64,000 nucleotides of DNA. It comes from Paraphysomonas bandaiensis. Taxonomy: Eukaryota; Protista; Chrysophyceae. Below are positions 45,721-55,366 of the stretch, in pieces. The DNA is taken from assembly GCA_965644295.1 (NCBI GenBank), contig CBFFRP010000362.1, positions 1 to 64,000 on the forward strand, read 5' to 3'. The translations under genes and the position numbers were made by a program. Positions within the stretch are counted from its first letter, which is position 1. The number at the start of each line of letters is the position of its first letter. Under the pieces are notes generated by a model, which was not told the origin of the DNA, did no database searches, and saw nothing but the letters and a program-made list of their open reading frames with translations.

Positions 45721-46455
45721 AAGTTCCATCTATTGCAGGGTTCAAGGCTGATGGAAGTGGAAGTAACAGGTTTAAAGTTTAAAGCACATGTTATGATTGA
45801 TGAATTGCTACTCTACATATTTGGGAATGTTTATATTAAAATGGCATTACTGTAATAGTGGCATTCTTTAACTGGATGTCAGCTTTTGCTTGGAATTCTT
45901 CTCTCGGTCGTCTCAACAATTGGAGTTGCAATACTTACTACTTACATACTTATTACTTATCCACTCCTGATTATGGAGTGAGCACTCTCGTCCCAGATAT
46001 AACGATTTAGATGGTGATTGAAACTCTGTGATGTTAAATGCACAATCATTGTGTAAAAATAAGTTATACGTCCAAAAATACATACTCTGGTGATGCCTTC
46101 TTTCTGCGAAATAAAATTGTTTATTGTGATATAGTAGTTAAAGGAAATTTGCAAATGTCTATTATTAATAGAATTCTACTATATTTCATTAATAGAATGA
46201 ATGCAAAAGGTGAAAGGAAAACAGAAAACACCAAATCAAAACAAATAGAAGTACACTAAAGAGACTACATATATACATATCAATTTTGATACACATGGTA
46301 GATAAAAAAGGTAGATTCTTAGTCAATGACATACCCAGGCCCACAACTCTAGACAACAAATGACAGCGGGGTTGCCGAAAATTGATATCTGCAAGATTGG
46401 ACTTACTCGCTTTTTTAGTGTATCCAATTATAAATCAAATCCACATTCGACTAAA

Positions 46456-48512
46456 TTAAGACTGTCCAATGGATGTATTCTGCACGGGTGACATTCCCGC
46501 ACACCGAAAGCACATACACTTACCCGGTACAGGACACTGAAGCAGCGGAGAATGTGTTACAACACCACATCGACTGCAGAACGCATTCAAACATTTACAG
46601 CAGTGATGCCGCTTTCTCCATCTAATCTTATGTGGTTTGAATTTAAATTTTCCCTTACATATGAAGCAGTGTTTATTACCACTATCCTCACCGTCGAACA
46701 AGTCATGTCGACTAGCATCTTCATCACACGAAGAGTGAGCACTTGAGGAAATAGAGTCATTGCGGCTGAATCGTGTCGGCGCCATGCCAGAGTTGATAGA
46801 ACATTCGCCAAATACCTTAGCCAAAAACGACCACTTGGATTGGGCGCATATCTGCTGACTGATACTCAATACCGGACTTAGAAATAGAAGTGGTTTTACA
46901 TGAAAGCCATGGAACCAAGTGAAAACAGAACTCACTGATTCATGGGTATCAGATATTAACTCTGTGCAAAAGTTGAGTTTTTTCATAGCACGAAGATATA
47001 TGCTATAAGCCACTACAGCTCCTAGAATTAATAGGGCATATATTGCAACTGCGAAGTCGGAAGATTTTTTGAACACATGTACAGTCCCTGCTGTTACAAC
47101 TGCTGATATACCAGAAATGAACTTCAAAGAGGACAACGATATTGTGTAACTTGATTTTAAGGAGTTCGAGTAAGAGCTATCCTTTGGGGTAGAAACTGCT
47201 ACTGCTGATTGAAGCGGTGTATGAATACTTCTGCGATTGGTGTTCCTTGAAGCATTGGACGTGAGCTTGTCGACATCAAGTCCTGTTGAGATTTTTAACA
47301 TTGACATAGGCATATATTGTGCAACAGCAATTTCACCACATCTATCAGATATTTCTTTGCTTGATAAAGAAGTAGTAGCAGGCCCTGTCAATGGCAATTC
47401 AAAATTCAAATACATATATTCCGACCGGCCAATCACATTCCAGCTCGAGAGACGATATGTGTGAGACACAAGAGAATGAGCGGAATGCAATGGTATCGAA
47501 TCCGACGTGTAAGTATCGATCCCATCATATACTGTTATCCAACGGTGTTGAGAAGTACTACCCGGTTTAGAATTGGGATCTACATCAAGTCGCTGAAGGA
47601 GATACTTGTGTACAGGATACATATTAGTATTCGAATCTATTTCTGCGATTTTCCATTCTACTGTTACATGTGTAAAGCACCGAGATGATTCAATCAACAC
47701 TACTTGAGGGGGGGAAGTAATGAGTGGAGGTCGCCCCATACCCAACAACTTCATCCGCATACCCCTTAGAAGCCGTCGTTTAAGAGTTATGCGAGTGATA
47801 CCAAGCTCTTGTTCCAATAGCTGTCCATCATTTTCGAGCAACTCAGGGAAATCATACCCAGTAATTCCTACAAAGTAGTAAGCATATTAGAGTACATAAA
47901 CTTCACCTATGAGCAAAACATATGTACGTTCAACAACATGCTATTATCTAAAATATACAGTTGACAAACCATTTCTTATAAATCTTGCAACAATAGACTC
48001 CGGTATTAACTGAGAGTGTGTTACCCACTCAGCAACCTCTTCCGTCGGAAGTAACGACGCTATCAATACAGATCAACGTATGAGAAGTGAGCCGAAGAGG
48101 CAGAAAAGAACATACCTAAAGATTGCCAGTACACTACCAAATCATTTTTCTTGAGGATCATATCGTTTTCTCTGCCTAAATTCCTAAACACACTCGAAAC
48201 TGCATTTTGAATTTCACTGTTCTCATCTAAAGACTTTCCCCCGGTGTCTTTTACAAACTGAAAGTAGAACAGTGTGAACACATATGCTACAGTGCATGAA
48301 TAGATTCAACTGCACACTACCTCTCTGAGCTCATCAAGACTGATCTGCCCATTAGCATTATTGTCCATATCAGCAAAAAAACCATCTCTAGATTGATCTG
48401 AGGTGAAACCGTCCCCCAACTCACCGGTGTCTATGCAATTACATCTGCCCATGCAGCATGTATATATCCAAAGCGCGAACACCATTGCATGGGATCTCCA
48501 TAATAGCTTCAT
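46456..48512 (-). CDS. STIM-like EF-hand/SAM protein with FN3, transmembrane helix and C-terminal FYVE-like zinc finger, 4 exons
   Basis: Signal peptide MKLLWRSHAMVFALWIYTCC; canonical EF loop DNNANGQISLDE; degenerate second EF; SAM (TEEVAEWVTH..F..GITGYDFPEL..LGITRITLKRRL); FN3 (VTVEW..YLLQR..W..VYDG..YRLSSWNVIGRS); TM AVAIYALLILGAVVAYSIYL; CFIC..RKRHHCCKC..FCSRC..CFRC. Confidence 0.85.
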
Positions 48513-48694
48513 GAGTGCAATCAGCAATAGTAGACTGCAACAATTTCTCAGTGATTTTGCATAAGGATGTAACCACAGATCTATTGATAGTGCGGTTATG
48601 TGATATGAGTGAGTCTTGAAACGGACTGTGAGAACAACTTAACGCAACGAACAAATTCGAAACCAATAGAAAAAGAGTTCAACTCGGTATACAA

Positions 48695-49393
48695 ACATAC
48701 ATACATACATACATACATACATACATACATACATACATACATACATACATACATACATACATACATACATACATACATACATACATACATACATACATAC
48801 ATACATACATACATACATACATACATACATACATACATACATACATACATACATACATACATACATACATACATAATACATACATAATACATACATAGTA
48901 CATAATACATACATACATACATACATACATACATACATACATACATACATACATACATACATACATACATACATACATACATACATACATACATACATAC
49001 ATACATACATACATACATACATACATACATACATACATACATACATACATACATACATACATACATACATACATACATACATACATACATACATACATAC
49101 ATACATACATACATACATACATACATACATACATACATACATACATACATACATACATACATACATACATACATACATACATACATACATACATACATAC
49201 ATACATACATACATACATACATACATACATACATACATACATACATACATACATACATACATACATACATACATACATACATACATACATACATACATAC
49301 ATACATACATACATACATACATACATACATACATACATACATACATACATACATACATACATACATACATACATACATACATACATACATACA

Positions 49394-49425
<32 letters not shown>

Positions 49426-49805
49426 CATACATACATACATACATACATACATACATACATACATACATACATACATACATACATACATACATACATACAT
49501 ACATACATACATACATACATACATACATACATACATACATACATACATACATACATACATACATACATACATACATACATACATACATACATACATACAT
49601 ACATACATACATACATACATACATACATACATACATACATACATACATACATACATACATACATGCATACATACATACATACATACATACATACATACAT
49701 ACATACATACATACATACATACATACATACATACATACATACATACATACATACATACATACATACATACATACATACATACATACATACATACATACAT
49801 GCATA
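48695..49805. repeat. (CATA)n microsatellite, ~1.1 kb
   Basis: Directly visible, with few interruptions (near 48875-48905, 49423 and 49666). Confidence 0.99.
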
Positions 49806-49921
49806 CGGCTTCAGTGGAGTGTGCGGATGCGACTATATCTCAACGACGTTTCTTGCTATCGTATCACATTCTCCCTCAATGCTTCTCCGTCACCAGTCCT
49901 AATGATCTCCGATATTTAACA

Positions 49922-52568
49922 ATGTCTCATAGATATCTCTGGTCTTATCTATTGCTGTGTGTTGTGTGTATATATGGACAGTATCATCAGCAGTCTCCAT
50001 ACTGTAAACGAGATTATGTGCCTGAGTATATAGCCCACAACAACACATATATATGCCGATATATCAAACCATCTGAGATTATCGCTGGCATGAAGTGGCT
50101 AGTGGATCAACCGGTGTCCTCTGCCTGTACTGGTAATGTTATCGTCCATGAGGGGTTTCATGTATGTGATAGTGAGCTGCCCACCTATGAGGGGATGGTA
50201 TATGTCTACATGTACAACAATAACAAGGAACAATGCGTGCTTAGAACTCCTGTTGGGGAATACTGGCTCTCACGAGGGTACTTTGTTCGGTATATTTTTC
50301 CTGGATTTCCAGTCAAATGTACGAAACAATTTCATTCGCAAAAAAAGAGAGGAGAGAGAATTAGCTTTCATCGCTCACTACCAGAGAATGACGAAGAGGT
50401 CCATATGCTGTTTCTTGAGGATGACAAAGGCCAGAGTTCATTTGAGTTAGCCGTCATGATGTCAAATTGGCCAGGACGACGAAATGTTCGCCAAATTAGT
50501 ATGAGATTAAGATACTCGTGTTCAGTCTTGCAAGACCTCGGATTCGGAACATCCACAGGCTGGGGTCTATGGTCTCTTCATCATTTCCTCAGAACCGCAG
50601 GATTTGAGAGATTTGCAGTTTCATCAGAGAGTGGATCAACAAAATCCCAACCATTGTGTATTAAAGGTTAGTCCATTATGTCAGCATGTGTGTAGTATAA
50701 TATACATTTGAGTTGCACTTTGGACCTTATTGTGCTGTACGTTTAAAGAATTTATAATGTGTGTTTAAAAATAGAGGTATTGCAAGCGGCTGAAATCGAC
50801 CCATCGAAATGTTGCTATTATTCCAGTTTCATTCGAAATCGTCCGGCAGACTTGACACTCCCTGCAACCATTCATGACTATCCAGCGGCAAATTTTGATT
50901 CAAGACTGAATGCAGTACTTTGGAATATCGCAAGTAGTGATATTCCCCCGTATTGTGCACTTCCAGTAGGGGCAAACCGCACCTATGAGCTCACCTCAAT
51001 GTATAAGTGGATTTGGCGGGAACTAAAATATACCTGTCAGATAGTACAACACAGTTTTCCGTGTACGAGAACGCCCATTGTTAATCCTTTAACGCCGTGC
51101 ATGCGATCCGTTGCGTCTGCAATGGCAGAGGACTATGCATGGAGCAAGGGTTGGTGCCATGTAAGTACTGGGTTGTCTGATATACCAGAGCTCCCGGATA
51201 TGGAATCACAAGCAGCGCAGTTGGTGGAAAACGGGAAGGAGATAGATGCGATGCGAGATGCTAACAAACCGGCCTTGCGATTAGTATTTCTTATAACCGT
51301 ATACCGGGATATCGAATTCGTACAGCGGTTACTGGATAAGCTATACAGCCCTTTTCATCAGTATGTCATCGCTGTGGATAAGAAGCAAGTATCGTTTGTG
51401 GCTGATATGAGGAGTCTTGTGCGAAGCCGTTATGGTCGCAATGTTGTTGTGAGTGATCCGTATGCTGTAGTGTACTTGGCCTCGTCTGCCACCCGCATTC
51501 TTATACATGGAATGTCCTGGTTCTTGCGCCGTATTCCGGGATGGGATTATCTTGTTACTTTGACTGGTAGTGACTACCCTCTTATTCCTCTGGCACGGAT
51601 GGAATCCATTCTTGCTGCTAGAAATCCCCCAATGCCGAGTCTTATGGCGTGGAGTTTAAAATCTATATCGTCAACCAAACCCCTGTCTCTATCACCGTTG
51701 GCTCAGCACGCAGCGAAAGTGGTATTCAGTGAACGCCGAGGAGGTGTTAGCCACGCCAGAGGTAACTCACAGTTTGGCCTACCACTAACATGTGAGGGGC
51801 AAAGCCTCTTATGTAGATACAACAACAGGAATGCTCCCAAGCGGTGGCTTACGAACGATACATTTCATTCACAGGTAACTATCAGTTTATGTGCAAATTC
51901 CTTGAGTATTGCTATATATTTGCCAGCGTATACCTCTTCGGTTTCACTTATAGGATATTTATCGCTTGTATTGTATGCTGAGTCTTCCTATATCGCTACT
52001 AGCTACAATTGTGACTGTTTTGTTTTTGCTGTGCTAGTGGCTCTTCGGTAAAGACATCTGGAGGGATAACGTAAACATGAACTTCGTGAAAGAGTGGAGT
52101 GCTCCTCCAGTTGATAATACTTTTCGTGTATGGCATAAGAGTGACCCTGCCACTACTGGTGTGTATGATAGGGAGAGTGTGGAGTATATCATACGTAGCA
52201 GTGAAGGCATCAAGTATTATCATTTCTTCAAATATATGCTTGTCGCCTCTGAAGAACACTATTGGATTTCTCTATTGGGAAACTGGAAGCGGACTATTCG
52301 CTTTGTGAATAGTATTCAGTCCCTTGCGATATGGAATACATGGAGACACGGTACCTTAACCTATAACACTACGAAAAGCCGAAGCAAGGGTGACAGAAGT
52401 ACCCACACATCTTTTTTATCGACTCGTGAAATTGATATTCTAAGGGGACTAAATGAGTTGGGCGTGTTCTTTGCACGTAAATTTACTTCGAACCAAGCTG
52501 ATGTGCTTGATATGATAGATGACATGATAGAAAATGATAAGAGTACCAAGTGGCTTCGCACTGCCTAA
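49922..52568 (+). CDS. Secretory-pathway GT14 (core-2/I-branching/xylosyltransferase-like) glycosyltransferase with an extra N-terminal domain, 3 exons
   Basis: N-terminal hydrophobic signal; RLVFLITVYRD..RLLDKLYSPFHQYVIAVDK, WDYLVTLTGSDYPL, HSQ/W, SEEHYW, FFARKF. Confidence 0.82.
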
Positions 52569-53425: not shown

Positions 53426-55366
53426 CTACGAGGTTGACGTAGGACCACTAGTAGAGGGGTGAGACTGAGGTTTCTGGCGAATTTCTTCAGCTATAAATAA
53501 CGCATTAGAATAATGTAATCGAGTACAATACATACAAAGTGCACAATTATACAGGAATGGCGAAATAAGCGAACACTTGTACAATAAAACCCCTGTACAT
53601 ATGATTCACCTGTCAAAAATCCAGAAGCTAAAGGTGCACGAGTAGCGCTGGTAAAAAGCCGAACCTCCCATGATGAGATGTCGAAATAAACATACTGTAC
53701 ACCCGGGTGTCCTTGAATCTGCTCCTGTGGGCTACGTGATTTAAACCATACCCGGAGTTCACCGTGGTACCGCCATTCTCGCCGATACAACTCTACGGCG
53801 GAAGTAGTTTGCAGTACATCCCTAGGCATCGCGTAAAACATGTAAAATAGTGTCTCCAACTGGAACTTTGACAAATGCTCGGGCTTAAGACTAGGCGAGT
53901 GCATCAGATAGCACTGGGGTGTTGTGAATTGAGTCTCGCTTGCCGCCGTCTGATCAGCAAATGGACCCGAAAATGTGGTATACAAATTATCAACAGAATT
54001 AAGGTTCAGTCCAAATGTTGTGAGATCAGACCCCAACGAGAGATAATTCATATCCTATATAAAAGTATATAAATATATAAGAAGTTAATAAATGATACTA
54101 GAGAACACTATGAATCGACGGATTAAAGGAATGGTAGAATGCTAAATACCCAGATAACATGCTGTCCATTTTACACCACCTTGTTTGTCATATTGATTAC
54201 ATCCAGTAGCCCCATCAAGCCATACTTCAGCTCTCCAGATGGACCAGATTCAGATCCCATTAATCGAGGCGACGCCGGAACGCTCGGTGGTCGGCTAGGC
54301 GGATTACCAGAATTTGACCGCGTATTTCCTGGCACATTGGCACTGGATGAAAGCGGCATGTTACCAACAACACTCCCAAACCCAGTTCCGACTTCTCCTA
54401 GACCAGCAGAAGGCTGAAGTGGTGGTGATTTGATAGATTGTGGTTGTATAAGTGGGGAGGCTTGGCGAGGAAAAGACGGCGACGAACCAGCATGCCGGGG
54501 CAGATTATGCTGTCCCTGCTGGTGCTGTTGACCTTGAGTTTGTTGAGATACAACGGGATGTTCGGAATGCTGCTGCACTTCTTCATTTGTACTAGACGTG
54601 CTCTCCGTCCGACTTTTTCCTTGAGAGCTTGGCAATGCGGGGAACTCTTCACTGTGTATAGTGAATTCTTCCTCTCTTTGTGGGGGCAGGCCTCCTTGGG
54701 AAAGATGTGGTCCTGGTATTTGACTATTGACACTGGATGGAATCCGGAGTTGCTGAGGCTGTCCGTGTAGCATAGAGAAGTTGGTATTGTCGTATTGCAT
54801 AGACGAATCAGGCATGGTGCGCTGCTGACCATAACCCATCCCCATTTGAAGTCCCCCACCGCCACCCATCATATCTCCTCCCATACGTTGGTACATACCA
54901 CCACCCATATTCATTCCCATGCCTCCCTGATTAGAGGGCATCCCTAAATAAAGAGGACACTATTAGATCATTGGACTTTCTTATATCTATTTTCACTACG
55001 AGGATGTGGGTATCAGTACCACACATACTGGTCAGTGCACAACATCACCTCCATATGACGATTGTCTCTGCTGCATTGGCGGTCCACTGTTCATATAATC
55101 TCCACCCATAGGCATACCACCACTTTGACTTCGACCAACCTGCGCATACATCACTATCTCTCTATTTATTAACGTGAACACATACCATAGAAGGCATAGG
55201 AGGTCTCTGTTGACTATGCTGGCCCATCCCTTGTGCTGTACATGTATTACACACATCACTCATGTATATAAATCATCATATCTAATTAACACTCACATTG
55301 TTGATGCATGTTATAGGGAATATAGCCATTATACCCTCTGCTATCCCCTGACATGTGTTGCTGCAT
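53426..55366 (-). CDS. NOT2: CCR4-NOT complex subunit NOT2 (start uncertain)
   Basis: EEFTIHSEEFPALP, KYGLMGLLDVI, LSLGSDLTTFGLNLNS, LETLFYMFYAMPRDVLQ, ELYRREWRYH NOT-box. Confidence 0.93.

What the first reader, a model, noticed from the sequence alone, without database searches (positions are those of the whole stretch)
46456..48512. STIM-like luminal Ca2+-sensor module wired to FN3 and a FYVE-like finger instead of Orai-activating coiled coils
Seen after splicing four exons: signal peptide, canonical EF loop DNNANGQISLDE (STIM1 has DDDANGDVDVEE), a hidden second EF (..MILKKNDLVVYWQSL, cf. KLISVEDLWKAWKSS), and a SAM ending MKLLG (cf. TVLFG). Then come FN3, a Ser/Thr-rich linker, a TM helix and an 8-Cys FYVE-like finger with RKRHHC but no WxxD or RVC motif. 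Established: EF-SAM is the ER Ca2+-store sensor of animal STIM, and FYVE fingers bind PI3P. Inference: a store-sensing protein whose output is lipid or membrane tethering, e.g. ER-endosome/vacuole contact, rather than CAD/SOAR gating of Orai. That would be an alternative store-operated system in a protist.
Basis: partly seen in the sequence, partly recalled or inferred. Interest (0 to 1): 0.8.

Follow-up and report, generated by a model that had tools for sequence, protein, structure and literature searches.

The report
STIM-type calcium sensor with FYVE-like tail
A marine golden-brown protist expresses a membrane protein whose outer end is a true relative of the calcium-sensing head of the animal protein STIM. 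Its inner end carries a FYVE-family zinc finger where STIM has its channel-opening coil, so this sensor type exists far outside animals with a different output.

Summary

The protein reads: signal peptide, canonical EF-hand, degenerate second EF-hand, SAM, FN3, Ser/Thr-rich stalk, TM helix, disordered linker, C-terminal zinc finger.

The EF-SAM head is specifically STIM-like.
- An AlphaFold model of a homologue matches only STIM EF-SAM structures strongly (Z 15.5 and 11.6; the next hit is 7.4, among 48,161 chains).
- A 104-sequence SAM-only profile ranks STIM2, STIM1 and C. elegans STIM first in the PDB (E 2e-9 to 2e-8).

The finger belongs to the FYVE family (Vps27, E 9e-9). It lacks WxxD, RVC and the last Arg of R(R/K)HHCR, so PI3P binding is doubtful.

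The family is large (about 180 clusters) and carries only generic names. It occurs in diatoms, brown algae, chrysophytes, labyrinthulids and a haptophyte.

This genome has three Orai-like genes, no SOAR domain and one paralogue. This scan reported that paralogue earlier on another contig (s1-446471).

Store sensing, location and the finger's target remain inference. The exons were never joined; the head was folded through a homologue.

The parts
48513..48615 (-). 5' untranslated region (approximate)
   Evidence: Transcript contigs end at 48602-48615. The first in-frame ATG is at 48512.
48321..48512 (-). Exon 1 coding part (64 codons): signal peptide, then the entering helix and loop of EF-hand 1
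   Evidence: Splice junction 48321|48257 in three contigs. Aligns with the N-termini of homologues.
48447..48512 (-). Predicted signal peptide (about 22 residues; hydrophobic core MVFALWIYTCCM)
   Evidence: Kyte-Doolittle 1.92 over 12 residues. Homologues P0015, P0017, P0020, P0021 and P0022 also start with a hydrophobic leader. No dedicated signal-peptide predictor was available.
48330..48365 (-). Canonical EF-hand loop DNNANGQISLDE
   Evidence: Pfam EF-hand_1 E 4.6e-4 on the exon alone. In 115 family modules: position 1 Asp 95%, position 3 Asp/Asn 94%, position 5 Asp/Asn 93%, position 6 Gly 95%, position 12 Glu 98%.
48258..48320 (-). Intron 1 (63 nt, GT..AG)
48116..48257 (-). Exon 2: exiting helix of EF1 and the whole second EF-hand
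48141..48176 (-). Degenerate second EF-hand loop GRENDMILKKND (Gly in place of the position-1 Asp)
   Evidence: The family consensus here is near-canonical, and the paralogue has DGNKDMILKKDD.
48060..48115 (-). Intron 2 (56 nt, GT..AG)
47970..48059 (-). Exon 3: first half of the SAM domain
47868..47969 (-). Intron 3 (102 nt, GT..AG), inside the SAM domain
46456..47867 (-). Exon 4: second half of SAM, FN3, stalk, TM, cytosolic linker, finger, stop codon (46456-46458)
47734..48059 (-). SAM domain (interrupted by intron 3), ending ...MKLLGMG
   Evidence: The SAM-only family profile ranks STIM2, STIM1 and C. elegans STIM first in the PDB, aligned to the end of each chain (...LFG). 71 of 115 modules match Pfam SAM_2 at E <= 0.01.
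47386..47727 (-). FN3 domain (seven strands; YRLSSWNVIGRSE in strand F and the FG loop)
   Evidence: AlphaFold strands 54-156 of the exon-4 model. Foldseek hits are FN3 domains. Trp, Tyr-Arg and Trp-Asn..Gly are invariant. Pfam fn3 is above its cut-off in P0029 and P0038.
47128..47385 (-). Ser/Thr-rich, mostly disordered stalk with one N-x-S sequon and a conserved Cys
   Evidence: 33% Ser/Thr. pLDDT is below 50 over residues 187-226. The conserved Cys follows FN3 in most homologues.
47071..47127 (-). Weakly hydrophobic juxtamembrane helix (status unclear)
   Evidence: Kyte-Doolittle 1.47. AlphaFold helix 234-267.
46999..47055 (-). Transmembrane helix FAVAIYALLILGAVVAYSI, followed by RAMKK
   Evidence: Kyte-Doolittle 2.39. 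AlphaFold helix 271-303. Single-TM homologues have Lys/Arg-rich stretches after the helix.
46669..46998 (-). Cytosolic linker, largely disordered, with no coiled coil and no SOAR
   Evidence: pLDDT is below 50 over residues 315-393. No Pfam family at E <= 1 in this stretch apart from a chance-level SPC25 match that spans the TM helix (E 0.15, 12.2 bits against a 24.3 cut-off).
46501..46668 (-). C-terminal FYVE-family zinc finger: C-x2-C ... RKRHH-C-x2-C ... F-C-x2-C ... H ... C ... C-x-C-x2-C
   Evidence: Family profile against the PDB: Vps27 FYVE E 8.8e-9, WDFY3 8.7e-7, EEA1 2.8e-6. Nine positions are invariant in 83 fingers, eight Cys and one His. pLDDT is 82-92.
46300..46455 (-). 3' untranslated region (at least this far)
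   Evidence: Contigs of X1 and X2 run over 46300; the X3 contig ends at 46334.

Best explanation
The gene makes a 611-residue type-I membrane protein of the secretory pathway.

Shown:
- Its extracytosolic head is a genuine relative of the STIM EF-SAM module. It has one canonical Ca2+-binding EF-hand, a partner EF-hand that is degenerate in this copy, and a SAM domain whose conserved last helix is predicted to pack on the EF-hand pair.
- After the head come an FN3 domain, a Ser/Thr-rich stalk, a TM helix, about 100 disordered cytosolic residues and a FYVE-family zinc finger at the C-terminus.
- It has no SOAR/CAD.

Inferred, by analogy with STIM:
- With Ca2+ bound the head is compact and monomeric.
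- When Ca2+ in the compartment falls, EF-SAM loosens and self-associates.
- The molecules then cluster in the plane of the membrane.
- Single low-affinity fingers become a multivalent patch that holds a target on the same or an apposed membrane. The target would be an acidic lipid or a protein. This resembles the role of STIM1's polybasic tail more than that of SOAR.

The output would therefore be recruitment or tethering, not direct STIM-style gating of Orai.
For: Gene model and expression.

Head, by fold:
- Foldseek's top three hits are 6pw7, 2l5y and 2k60, all STIM EF-SAM (TM 0.71, 0.62, 0.58; everything else is at or below 0.45).
- VIA-align gives Z 15.5, 11.6 and 10.7 against 8.0 for the next hit.
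- An exhaustive pass over 48,161 chains finds only the two STIM representatives at Z >= 8.
- In the ESM Atlas, STIM clusters score TM 0.70-0.71, behind only the family's own oomycete cluster.

Head, by sequence:
- A 115-module profile aligns STIM2, C. elegans STIM and STIM1 end to end at E 3e-14 to 6e-13.
- A SAM-only profile ranks the three STIM chains first (40.3, 38.9 and 37.3 bits). The next chain, 2kiv, totals 33.0 bits, summed over two SAM copies of 16.8 and 14.5 bits; the best single other SAM domain, Shank2, scores 28.7.
- 15 of 115 modules give sub-threshold hits to Pfam EF-hand_STIM1.

Ca2+ ligands of EF1 are 93-98% conserved. The last SAM helix keeps its hydrophobic pattern and the ...LLGxG ending.

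Topology: a signal peptide, a strong TM helix, and positive residues after the TM in homologues.

Finger: FYVE domains top the PDB profile search. At least 91 distinct fingers sit at the C-termini of family members.

No SOAR.

STIM1 itself uses a lipid-binding C-terminal tail for Orai-independent recruitment to junctions (PMC2860680).
Against: - No localisation, Ca2+-binding or oligomerisation data exist.
- The EF-SAM fold was predicted for a homologue, P0017. The window's four pieces are 38, 53, 41 and 71% identical to it. The window's exons were not joined.
- AlphaFold has seen the STIM structures in training, so the inter-domain packing could be partly recalled.
- FN3 and a flexible stalk of about 90 residues lie between EF-SAM and the membrane. 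STIM has only a short linker there, so only clustering could be transmitted, not a rigid conformational change.
- FN3 plus a mucin-like stalk is typical of cell-surface proteins. In seawater the EF-hand would then be permanently loaded.
- The finger lacks WxxD and RVC.
- Close relatives (P0002, P0009) have two adjacent hydrophobic segments, so the number of membrane passes is not settled.
- Oomycetes reported to lack Orai (PMC9694693) seem to have the family. The family is therefore not tied to Orai.
Confidence: 0.5

Rival explanations
1. It is a cell-surface receptor or adhesion protein. EF-SAM-FN3 faces the sea water, Ca2+ is a permanent structural ligand, and the cytosolic FYVE-like finger links the protein to endocytic or cortical machinery. 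It senses no store.
For: FN3 plus a Ser/Thr-rich stalk is a classic ectodomain layout. Some relatives carry two EF-SAM-FN3 units in a row, like modular ectodomains. Four modules also touch the extracellular SPARC Ca2+-binding family. No ER-retrieval motif is visible at the C-terminus.
Against: The SAM is specifically STIM-like, and the Ca2+ ligands are conserved as in a working sensor. STIM1 too lacks a classic retrieval motif and partly reaches the plasma membrane (general knowledge). SAM domains are otherwise almost unknown outside the cytosol except in STIM (general knowledge).
Confidence: 0.25
2. It senses luminal Ca2+ in an endosomal, phagosomal, vacuolar or other acidic store. The finger binds PI3P or a related lipid on the cytosolic face of the same organelle (in cis) and so reports or controls the organelle's maturation.
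For: The finger's nearest relatives are endosomal PI3P readers: Vps27, EEA1, WDFY3, Hrs, endofin. This clade keeps RKRHHC. Earlier notes (untested here) take the organism for a phagotrophic chrysophyte.
Against: WxxD is found in 1 of 91 fingers, RVC in none, and the last Arg of the basic motif in 2 of 91. By established FYVE structure-function work all three motifs contribute to the PI3P pocket. An extra His/Cys set hints at a modified fold.
Confidence: 0.15
3. The likeness to STIM comes from an independent fusion of two common domains, an EF-hand pair and a SAM. The module is a generic Ca2+-binding or oligomerisation unit with no sensor role.
For: A single sequence and a shallow profile find only generic EF-hands. 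Pfam's EF-hand_STIM1 is never reached above its cut-off. The same genome has other SAM plus EF-hand proteins according to earlier notes (untested).
Against: The SAM-only profile, which has no canonical EF loop in it, still puts the three STIM chains first, aligned to their very ends. Order, spacing and predicted packing match STIM over 142-147 residues.
Confidence: 0.1

Closest known systems
STIM1 / STIM2 / C. elegans STIM (EF-SAM luminal domain; PDB 2k60, 2l5y, 6pw7)
   Same: Signal peptide and type-I topology. The order is canonical EF-hand, partner EF-hand, SAM, with the same spacing. The predicted fold superposes over 142-147 residues (Z 15.5 and 11.6; 10.7 over 139 for STIM1). Among all PDB SAM domains, STIM's is the closest by sequence profile. 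The last SAM helix ends ...LLG against STIM's ...LFG.
   Different: FN3 and a Ser/Thr stalk are inserted before the membrane. There is no CC1, SOAR/CAD or polybasic tail; a FYVE-family finger stands in their place. In most family members EF2 still looks able to bind a cation. Pfam's STIM EF-hand model is not reached. The family occurs in stramenopiles and a haptophyte, not in animals or choanoflagellates.
FYVE zinc fingers (Vps27, EEA1, WDFY3, RUFY1, Hrs)
   Same: Four C-x2-C pairs with FYVE spacing, the [KR]-H-H-C core, the F-C-x2-C element, and a position at a protein end. These are the top PDB profile hits (E 8.8e-9 to 1e-4).
   Different: No WxxD, no RVC (C-[VI]-C instead), and the last Arg of R(R/K)HHCR is missing. 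An extra near-invariant His and two extra invariant Cys are present (a possible third metal site). Pfam FYVE is below its cut-off for this protein (13.9 bits against 27.8).
Database relatives with no specific function assigned: Ectocarpus siliculosus D8LBP1 ('n/a'), Corethron hystrix A0A7S1B4T7 ('EF-hand domain-containing protein'), Pavlovales KAJ1623338.1 ('hypothetical protein'), Phaeothamnion CAM9753437.1, and an oomycete ESM-Atlas cluster auto-named 'Calmodulin'
   Same: The same EF-SAM-FN3 head (E 1e-30 or better) and, in most, the same TM plus C-terminal finger.
   Different: 28-47% identity to the window's protein. Some have two EF-SAM(-FN3) units in tandem. None is described as STIM-like in the papers I could search.
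Paralogue in the same genome
   Same: Same exon pattern and the same domain order, finger included.
   Different: Exon 4 is only 42% identical. Its second EF loop is near-canonical (DGNKDMILKKDD).

Membership tests
STIM (stromal interaction molecule) | Signal peptide and type-I topology with EF-SAM on the luminal side | tested here: met
   Hydrophobic leader, one strong TM helix, and positive residues after the TM in homologues. This rests on hydropathy only, with no dedicated predictor, and the number of passes in some relatives is unclear.
STIM (stromal interaction molecule) | Canonical Ca2+-binding EF-hand paired with a non-canonical EF-hand | tested here: met
   EF1 is DNNANGQISLDE. EF2 is GRENDMILKKND, with Gly at position 1. 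In the family at large EF2 is near-canonical.
STIM (stromal interaction molecule) | SAM directly after the EF pair, forming one compact EF-SAM unit | tested here: met
   Z 15.5, 11.6 and 10.7 to the three STIM EF-SAM structures; nothing else reaches 8.1. The SAM profile ranks STIM first. The fold was predicted on homologue P0017, not on the window's joined protein.
STIM (stromal interaction molecule) | Pfam EF-hand_STIM1 (PF25578) above its curated cut-off | tested here: not met
   No hit on P0017 or P0018 at E <= 0.1 and none at this locus. 15 of 115 modules hit below the cut-off, best E 1.4e-5.
STIM (stromal interaction molecule) | EF-SAM joined to the TM helix by a short linker | tested here: not met
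   An FN3 domain (about 110 residues) and a stalk of about 90 residues intervene.
STIM (stromal interaction molecule) | Cytosolic coiled coils with SOAR/CAD (PF16533) that bind and gate Orai | tested here: not met
   No SOAR in exon 4, in 16 homologues or in the whole genome (best 15.7 bits against a cut-off of 25).
STIM (stromal interaction molecule) | Ca2+-dependent monomer-to-oligomer switch and relocation after store depletion | not testable with these tools
   Needs protein biochemistry and live imaging.
FYVE zinc finger | Eight zinc-binding Cys in four C-x2-C pairs with FYVE spacing | tested here: met
   Invariant Cys pattern in 83 fingers. FYVE domains are the best PDB matches, E 8.8e-9.
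FYVE zinc finger | Pfam FYVE (PF01363) above its curated cut-off | tested here: not met
   13.9 bits against 27.8 for the window's finger. 15 of 21 fingers hit below the cut-off. The best relative, P0028, reaches 26.4 bits.
FYVE zinc finger | N-terminal WxxD motif | tested here: not met
   Absent here. Found in 1 of 91 family fingers.
FYVE zinc finger | R(R/K)HHCR basic motif | tested here: inconclusive
   The window has RKRHHC followed by Cys instead of Arg. The full motif occurs in 2 of 91 fingers; only [KR]-H-x-C is general.
FYVE zinc finger | RVC motif before the last C-x2-C | tested here: not met
   Replaced by C-[VI]-C (window: C-M-C) throughout the family.
FYVE zinc finger | Specific PI3P binding | not testable with these tools
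   Needs lipid-binding assays.
Fibronectin type III domain | Seven-strand beta sandwich with the conserved Trp (strand B) and Tyr (strands C and F) | tested here: met
   Seven predicted strands. FN3 structures fill the Foldseek list. Trp, Tyr-Arg and Trp-Asn..Gly are invariant. Pfam fn3 is not reached by the window's copy but is by P0029 and P0038.

The most novel reading that the evidence does not exclude
This family is the missing luminal Ca2+-store sensor of stramenopiles and haptophytes, lineages that have Orai-type channels but no STIM. Coupling would not use SOAR. Clustered FYVE-like fingers would dock the store membrane to the target membrane, next to Orai-like channels that, according to earlier untested notes, carry their own PH domain in this organism. 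That would be a store-operated entry pathway built on lipid-reading modules. It would also mean the EF-SAM sensor is older than animals and choanoflagellates, or was exchanged between lineages.
Probability: 0.15. Interest if true: 0.9.

Novelty: new variant of a known kind. Interest (0 to 1): 0.72.

Why it matters
Reviews place STIM in animals and choanoflagellates only. They state that diatoms, green algae and early plants have Orai but no known store sensor, so 'a different protein' must do the job (PMC11085791; PMC11506743).

This gene belongs to a large family with only generic database names, whose head is a real relative of the STIM sensor. The family occurs in exactly such lineages: diatoms, brown algae, chrysophytes, labyrinthulids and a haptophyte. 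That gives the open question a concrete candidate that can be tested in transformable diatoms or in Ectocarpus.

It also shows that evolution can couple the EF-SAM module to a quite different cytosolic output. This bears on how STIM arose and on how EF-SAM could be used as a portable luminal Ca2+ switch.

Tried and rejected
- Pfam on the single exons gave only sub-threshold EF-hand and FYVE hits. The pieces are too short.
- phmmer of one homologue's head against the PDB found only generic EF-hand proteins.
- The shallow 18-row profile was swamped by calmodulins, with STIM outside the top 60. A shallow SAM profile put STIM only at E 0.06-0.5. The relation became clear only with profiles of more than 100 sequences.
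- PF25578 and PF16533 searched over the genome gave nothing at this locus.
- The language-model Atlas search gave one weak lead, 0.83, a chlorophyte EF-hand/SAM cluster. I did not follow it.
- Word-index protein searches found only about 27 relatives and no close one; the best is 47% identical over a third of exon 4.
- Collins & Meyer 2011 and Cai et al. 2015 are not held in the library.
- Four literature searches found no paper that describes a STIM-like protein in stramenopiles.
- I considered a reading in which the Cys-rich end lies in the lumen as a disulphide domain, which would follow from two membrane passes. I set it aside because the domain is homologous to cytosolic FYVE fingers and single-TM relatives obey the positive-inside rule. 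It is not excluded for the P0002/P0009 clade.
- Steps left out by rule: joining the four exons into one protein for a search or a fold. The window's own EF-SAM was therefore studied exon by exon and through homologue P0017.
Full report
On the minus strand an ATG at 48512 opens a 192-nt exon. Exons of 142, 90 and 1412 nt follow, and the last ends with the stop at 46456-46458. The three introns (63, 56 and 102 nt) begin GT and end AG. The CDS is 1836 nt, which is 611 residues.

Three contigs of 2061-2165 nt from three runs of the same organism lie on the stretch with no mismatch and skip exactly these introns. They reach about 100 nt upstream of the ATG and at least 120-150 nt past the stop. Short pieces from a marine poly(A) metatranscriptome cover parts of exon 4 at 95-99% identity. 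Every search used the exon translations by reference or stored homologues.

**The architecture is conserved.** Translated exon by exon, the pieces align collinearly with full-length homologues, and the exon ends abut without gaps. The order is as follows.
- A hydrophobic leader.
- A short conserved Gly-Asp stretch.
- EF-hand 1, with loop DNNANGQISLDE.
- EF-hand 2, with loop GRENDMILKKND.
- A SAM domain ending ...MKLLGMG.
- An FN3 domain.
- An 89-residue stretch with 33% Ser/Thr.
- One strong hydrophobic helix followed by RAMKK.
- About 100 poorly ordered residues.
- A Cys/His-rich finger of 56 residues, nine residues from the C-terminus.

FN3 is supported by seven predicted strands, by the W / Y-R / W-N..G signature that is invariant in 24 sequences, and by Foldseek, whose list is filled with FN3 domains.

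**Is the head STIM-like or just an EF-hand next to a SAM?** First attempts were negative. A single homologue and an 18-row profile found only calmodulin-type proteins in the PDB. Structure then gave a clear answer.

An AlphaFold model of the head of homologue P0017 was built without templates (pLDDT 81). The window's four pieces are 38, 53, 41 and 71% identical to P0017. The results were:
- Foldseek's first three hits are the three solved STIM EF-SAM domains, TM 0.71, 0.62 and 0.58. All other hits are at or below 0.45 and cover one domain only.
- VIA-align gives Z 15.5 (rmsd 2.5 A, 145 residues), 11.6 and 10.7, against 8.0 for the next hit.
- An exhaustive pass over 48,161 representative chains finds only the two STIM representatives at Z >= 8; the next is 7.4.
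- In the ESM Atlas the nearest shapes are an oomycete cluster with FN3 and SAM (TM 0.75), which is evidently the same family, and then two STIM clusters (0.70-0.71).

**Sequence evidence followed once the family was deep enough.** An exhaustive HMMER search with the EF-SAM-FN3 profile found 180 clusters at E <= 1e-30. From those proteins I cut 115 complete EF-SAM modules.
- Their profile aligns STIM2, C. elegans STIM and STIM1 in one stretch from end to end, at E 2.8e-14, 3.6e-13 and 6.5e-13. Calmodulins score similarly, but only on the EF half and in several pieces.
- A profile of the SAM part alone (104 sequences, no canonical EF loop) ranks STIM2, STIM1 and C. elegans STIM first among all PDB sequences, at 40.3, 38.9 and 37.3 bits (E 2e-9 to 2e-8), aligned to the last residues of the chains. 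The next chain, 2kiv, totals 33.0 bits as the sum of two SAM copies (16.8 and 14.5). The best single other SAM domain, Shank2, gets 28.7. A few of the STIM bits come from the Trp-containing helix before the SAM, which other SAM entries lack.
- Fifteen modules touch Pfam's EF-hand_STIM1 below its cut-off.

I conclude that the head is a distant homologue of STIM EF-SAM, not merely a look-alike.

**The Ca2+ site is conserved.** Across 115 modules, EF1 keeps Asp1 (95%), Asp/Asn3 (94%), Asp/Asn5 (93%), Gly6 (95%), a hydrophobic residue at 8 (96%) and Glu12 (98%). That is the pattern of a site under selection to bind Ca2+. EF2 keeps Asp1 (91%), Asn/Asp3 (84%), Asp5 (72%) and Asp/Glu12 (99%) but rarely Gly6. 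In most members it may therefore still bind a cation. The window's copy has lost Asp1, and the paralogue has not.

**The finger is a FYVE-family domain without the PI3P signature.** An 83-sequence profile finds FYVE domains first: Vps27 8.8e-9, WDFY3 8.7e-7 and EEA1 2.8e-6 (the last two over the whole domain), then RUFY1, Hrs, endofin and Lst2. Rim2 and rabphilin come far behind. It is therefore a FYVE-family finger.

Of the three motifs that define PI3P-binding FYVE domains, little is left:
- WxxD occurs in 1 of 91 fingers.
- RVC is replaced everywhere by C-[VI]-C.
- The full R(R/K)HHCR occurs in 2 of 91. The window has RKRHHC followed by Cys.

A near-invariant extra His and two extra invariant Cys suggest a further metal site. 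Pfam FYVE is not reached. PI3P binding is therefore not to be assumed. A basic patch is kept, so acidic lipids or a protein partner are both possible targets.

**Topology.** The leader and the single strong TM helix place EF-SAM-FN3 in the lumen or outside, and the finger in the cytosol. This fits the positive-inside pattern of the single-TM relatives, and all known FYVE domains are cytosolic. A Cys in the first FN3 strand and one just after FN3 are conserved. This would fit an oxidising compartment, but that is inference. A weaker hydrophobic helix precedes the TM helix here, and P0002 and P0009 have two good hydrophobic segments. One or three passes would keep this topology and two would not, so the point needs experiment.

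**Context in the genome.** The 62.6-Mb assembly holds three Orai-like loci above Pfam's cut-off. One shows a Glu in the first TM helix at the place of the selectivity Glu. It has no SOAR domain. It has one paralogue of this gene, with the same exon pattern and 42% identity in exon 4. The scan reported that paralogue before (s1-446471). Three earlier notes say the Orai-like genes are fused to PH domains; I did not test the PH part.

**Distribution.** The named members come from these taxa:
- Ectocarpus and Phaeothamnion;
- Mallomonas;
- the diatoms Proboscia and Corethron;
- the labyrinthulid Mucochytrium;
- a Pavlovales haptophyte.

Oomycetes appear only through the Atlas cluster. Their database names are 'hypothetical', 'EF-hand domain-containing' or 'Calmodulin'. 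At least 91 distinct fingers sit at the C-termini. Several proteins carry two EF-SAM(-FN3) units in tandem.

[quoted passage not shown] None describes this family.

**How it most likely works (inference).** In STIM, loss of Ca2+ destabilises EF-SAM and drives self-association. Here the long flexible stalk rules out a rigid push across the membrane, but clustering would still pass through. Clustering would turn weak single fingers into a multivalent binder, and many FYVE domains need such avidity (general knowledge). STIM1 itself uses a C-terminal lipid-binding tail for Orai-independent recruitment to junctions (PMC2860680). My odds are:
- about 0.5 for a Ca2+-controlled clustering sensor of an internal store;
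- 0.25 for a cell-surface protein with structural Ca2+;
- 0.15 for an endosomal or vacuolar sensor acting in cis;
- 0.1 for convergence without a sensor role.

A direct role in opening Orai has no support beyond co-occurrence in this genome.

**Verdict.** It is a new variant of a known kind, and it is of real interest to calcium-signalling and protist biologists.

Noticed in passing
window 48689-49806: An (ATAC)n microsatellite of 281 copies (98% matches) begins about 75 bp upstream of the transcript's 5' end, so it fills the promoter-proximal region of this gene. The same repeat type lies beside an Orai-like locus (L004, about 2730-2950).
   Followed up: partly
G000 contig C297, 854103-856100 (L011, L013, L015): A paralogue with the same four-exon pattern and the same domain order. 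Exon 4 is 42% identical. Its second EF loop is near-canonical, unlike the window's copy. It was reported earlier by this scan (s1-446471).
   Followed up: partly
G000 contigs C66 (45760-46673), C374 (18539-19298), C348 (136494-137104); L001-L006: Three Orai-like genes match Pfam Orai-1 above its cut-off. The C66 copy shows a Glu in the first TM helix (…SSLCEIQIS…). Earlier notes say these genes are fused to PH domains; that was not checked here.
   Followed up: partly
P0028, P0029, P0032, P0038, P0054, P0074, P0082 (relatives from other organisms): Some family members carry two complete EF-SAM(-FN3) units in tandem before the TM helix. Among them are a Pavlovales haptophyte and the labyrinthulid Mucochytrium quahogii. 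The sensor head has therefore been duplicated within one chain.
   Followed up: partly
window 50759-52048 (+) and 53491-54048 (-): Neighbouring ORFs match a Core-2/I-branching glycosyltransferase (E 2e-13) and the NOT2/NOT3/NOT5 C-terminal domain (E 5e-27). No functional link to the finding is apparent.
   Followed up: no
P0027 (Ectocarpus siliculosus D8LBP1), C-terminus: The public Ectocarpus model starts a finger (C-x2-C) and then runs into unrelated sequence. The 3' end of that gene model is probably wrong.
   Followed up: no
ESM Atlas: A chlorophyte cluster of 243-residue proteins with SAM_2 and EF-hand domains was the nearest by language-model features (0.83, a weak score). It is a possible green-algal EF-SAM relative that is worth a proper test.
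   Followed up: no
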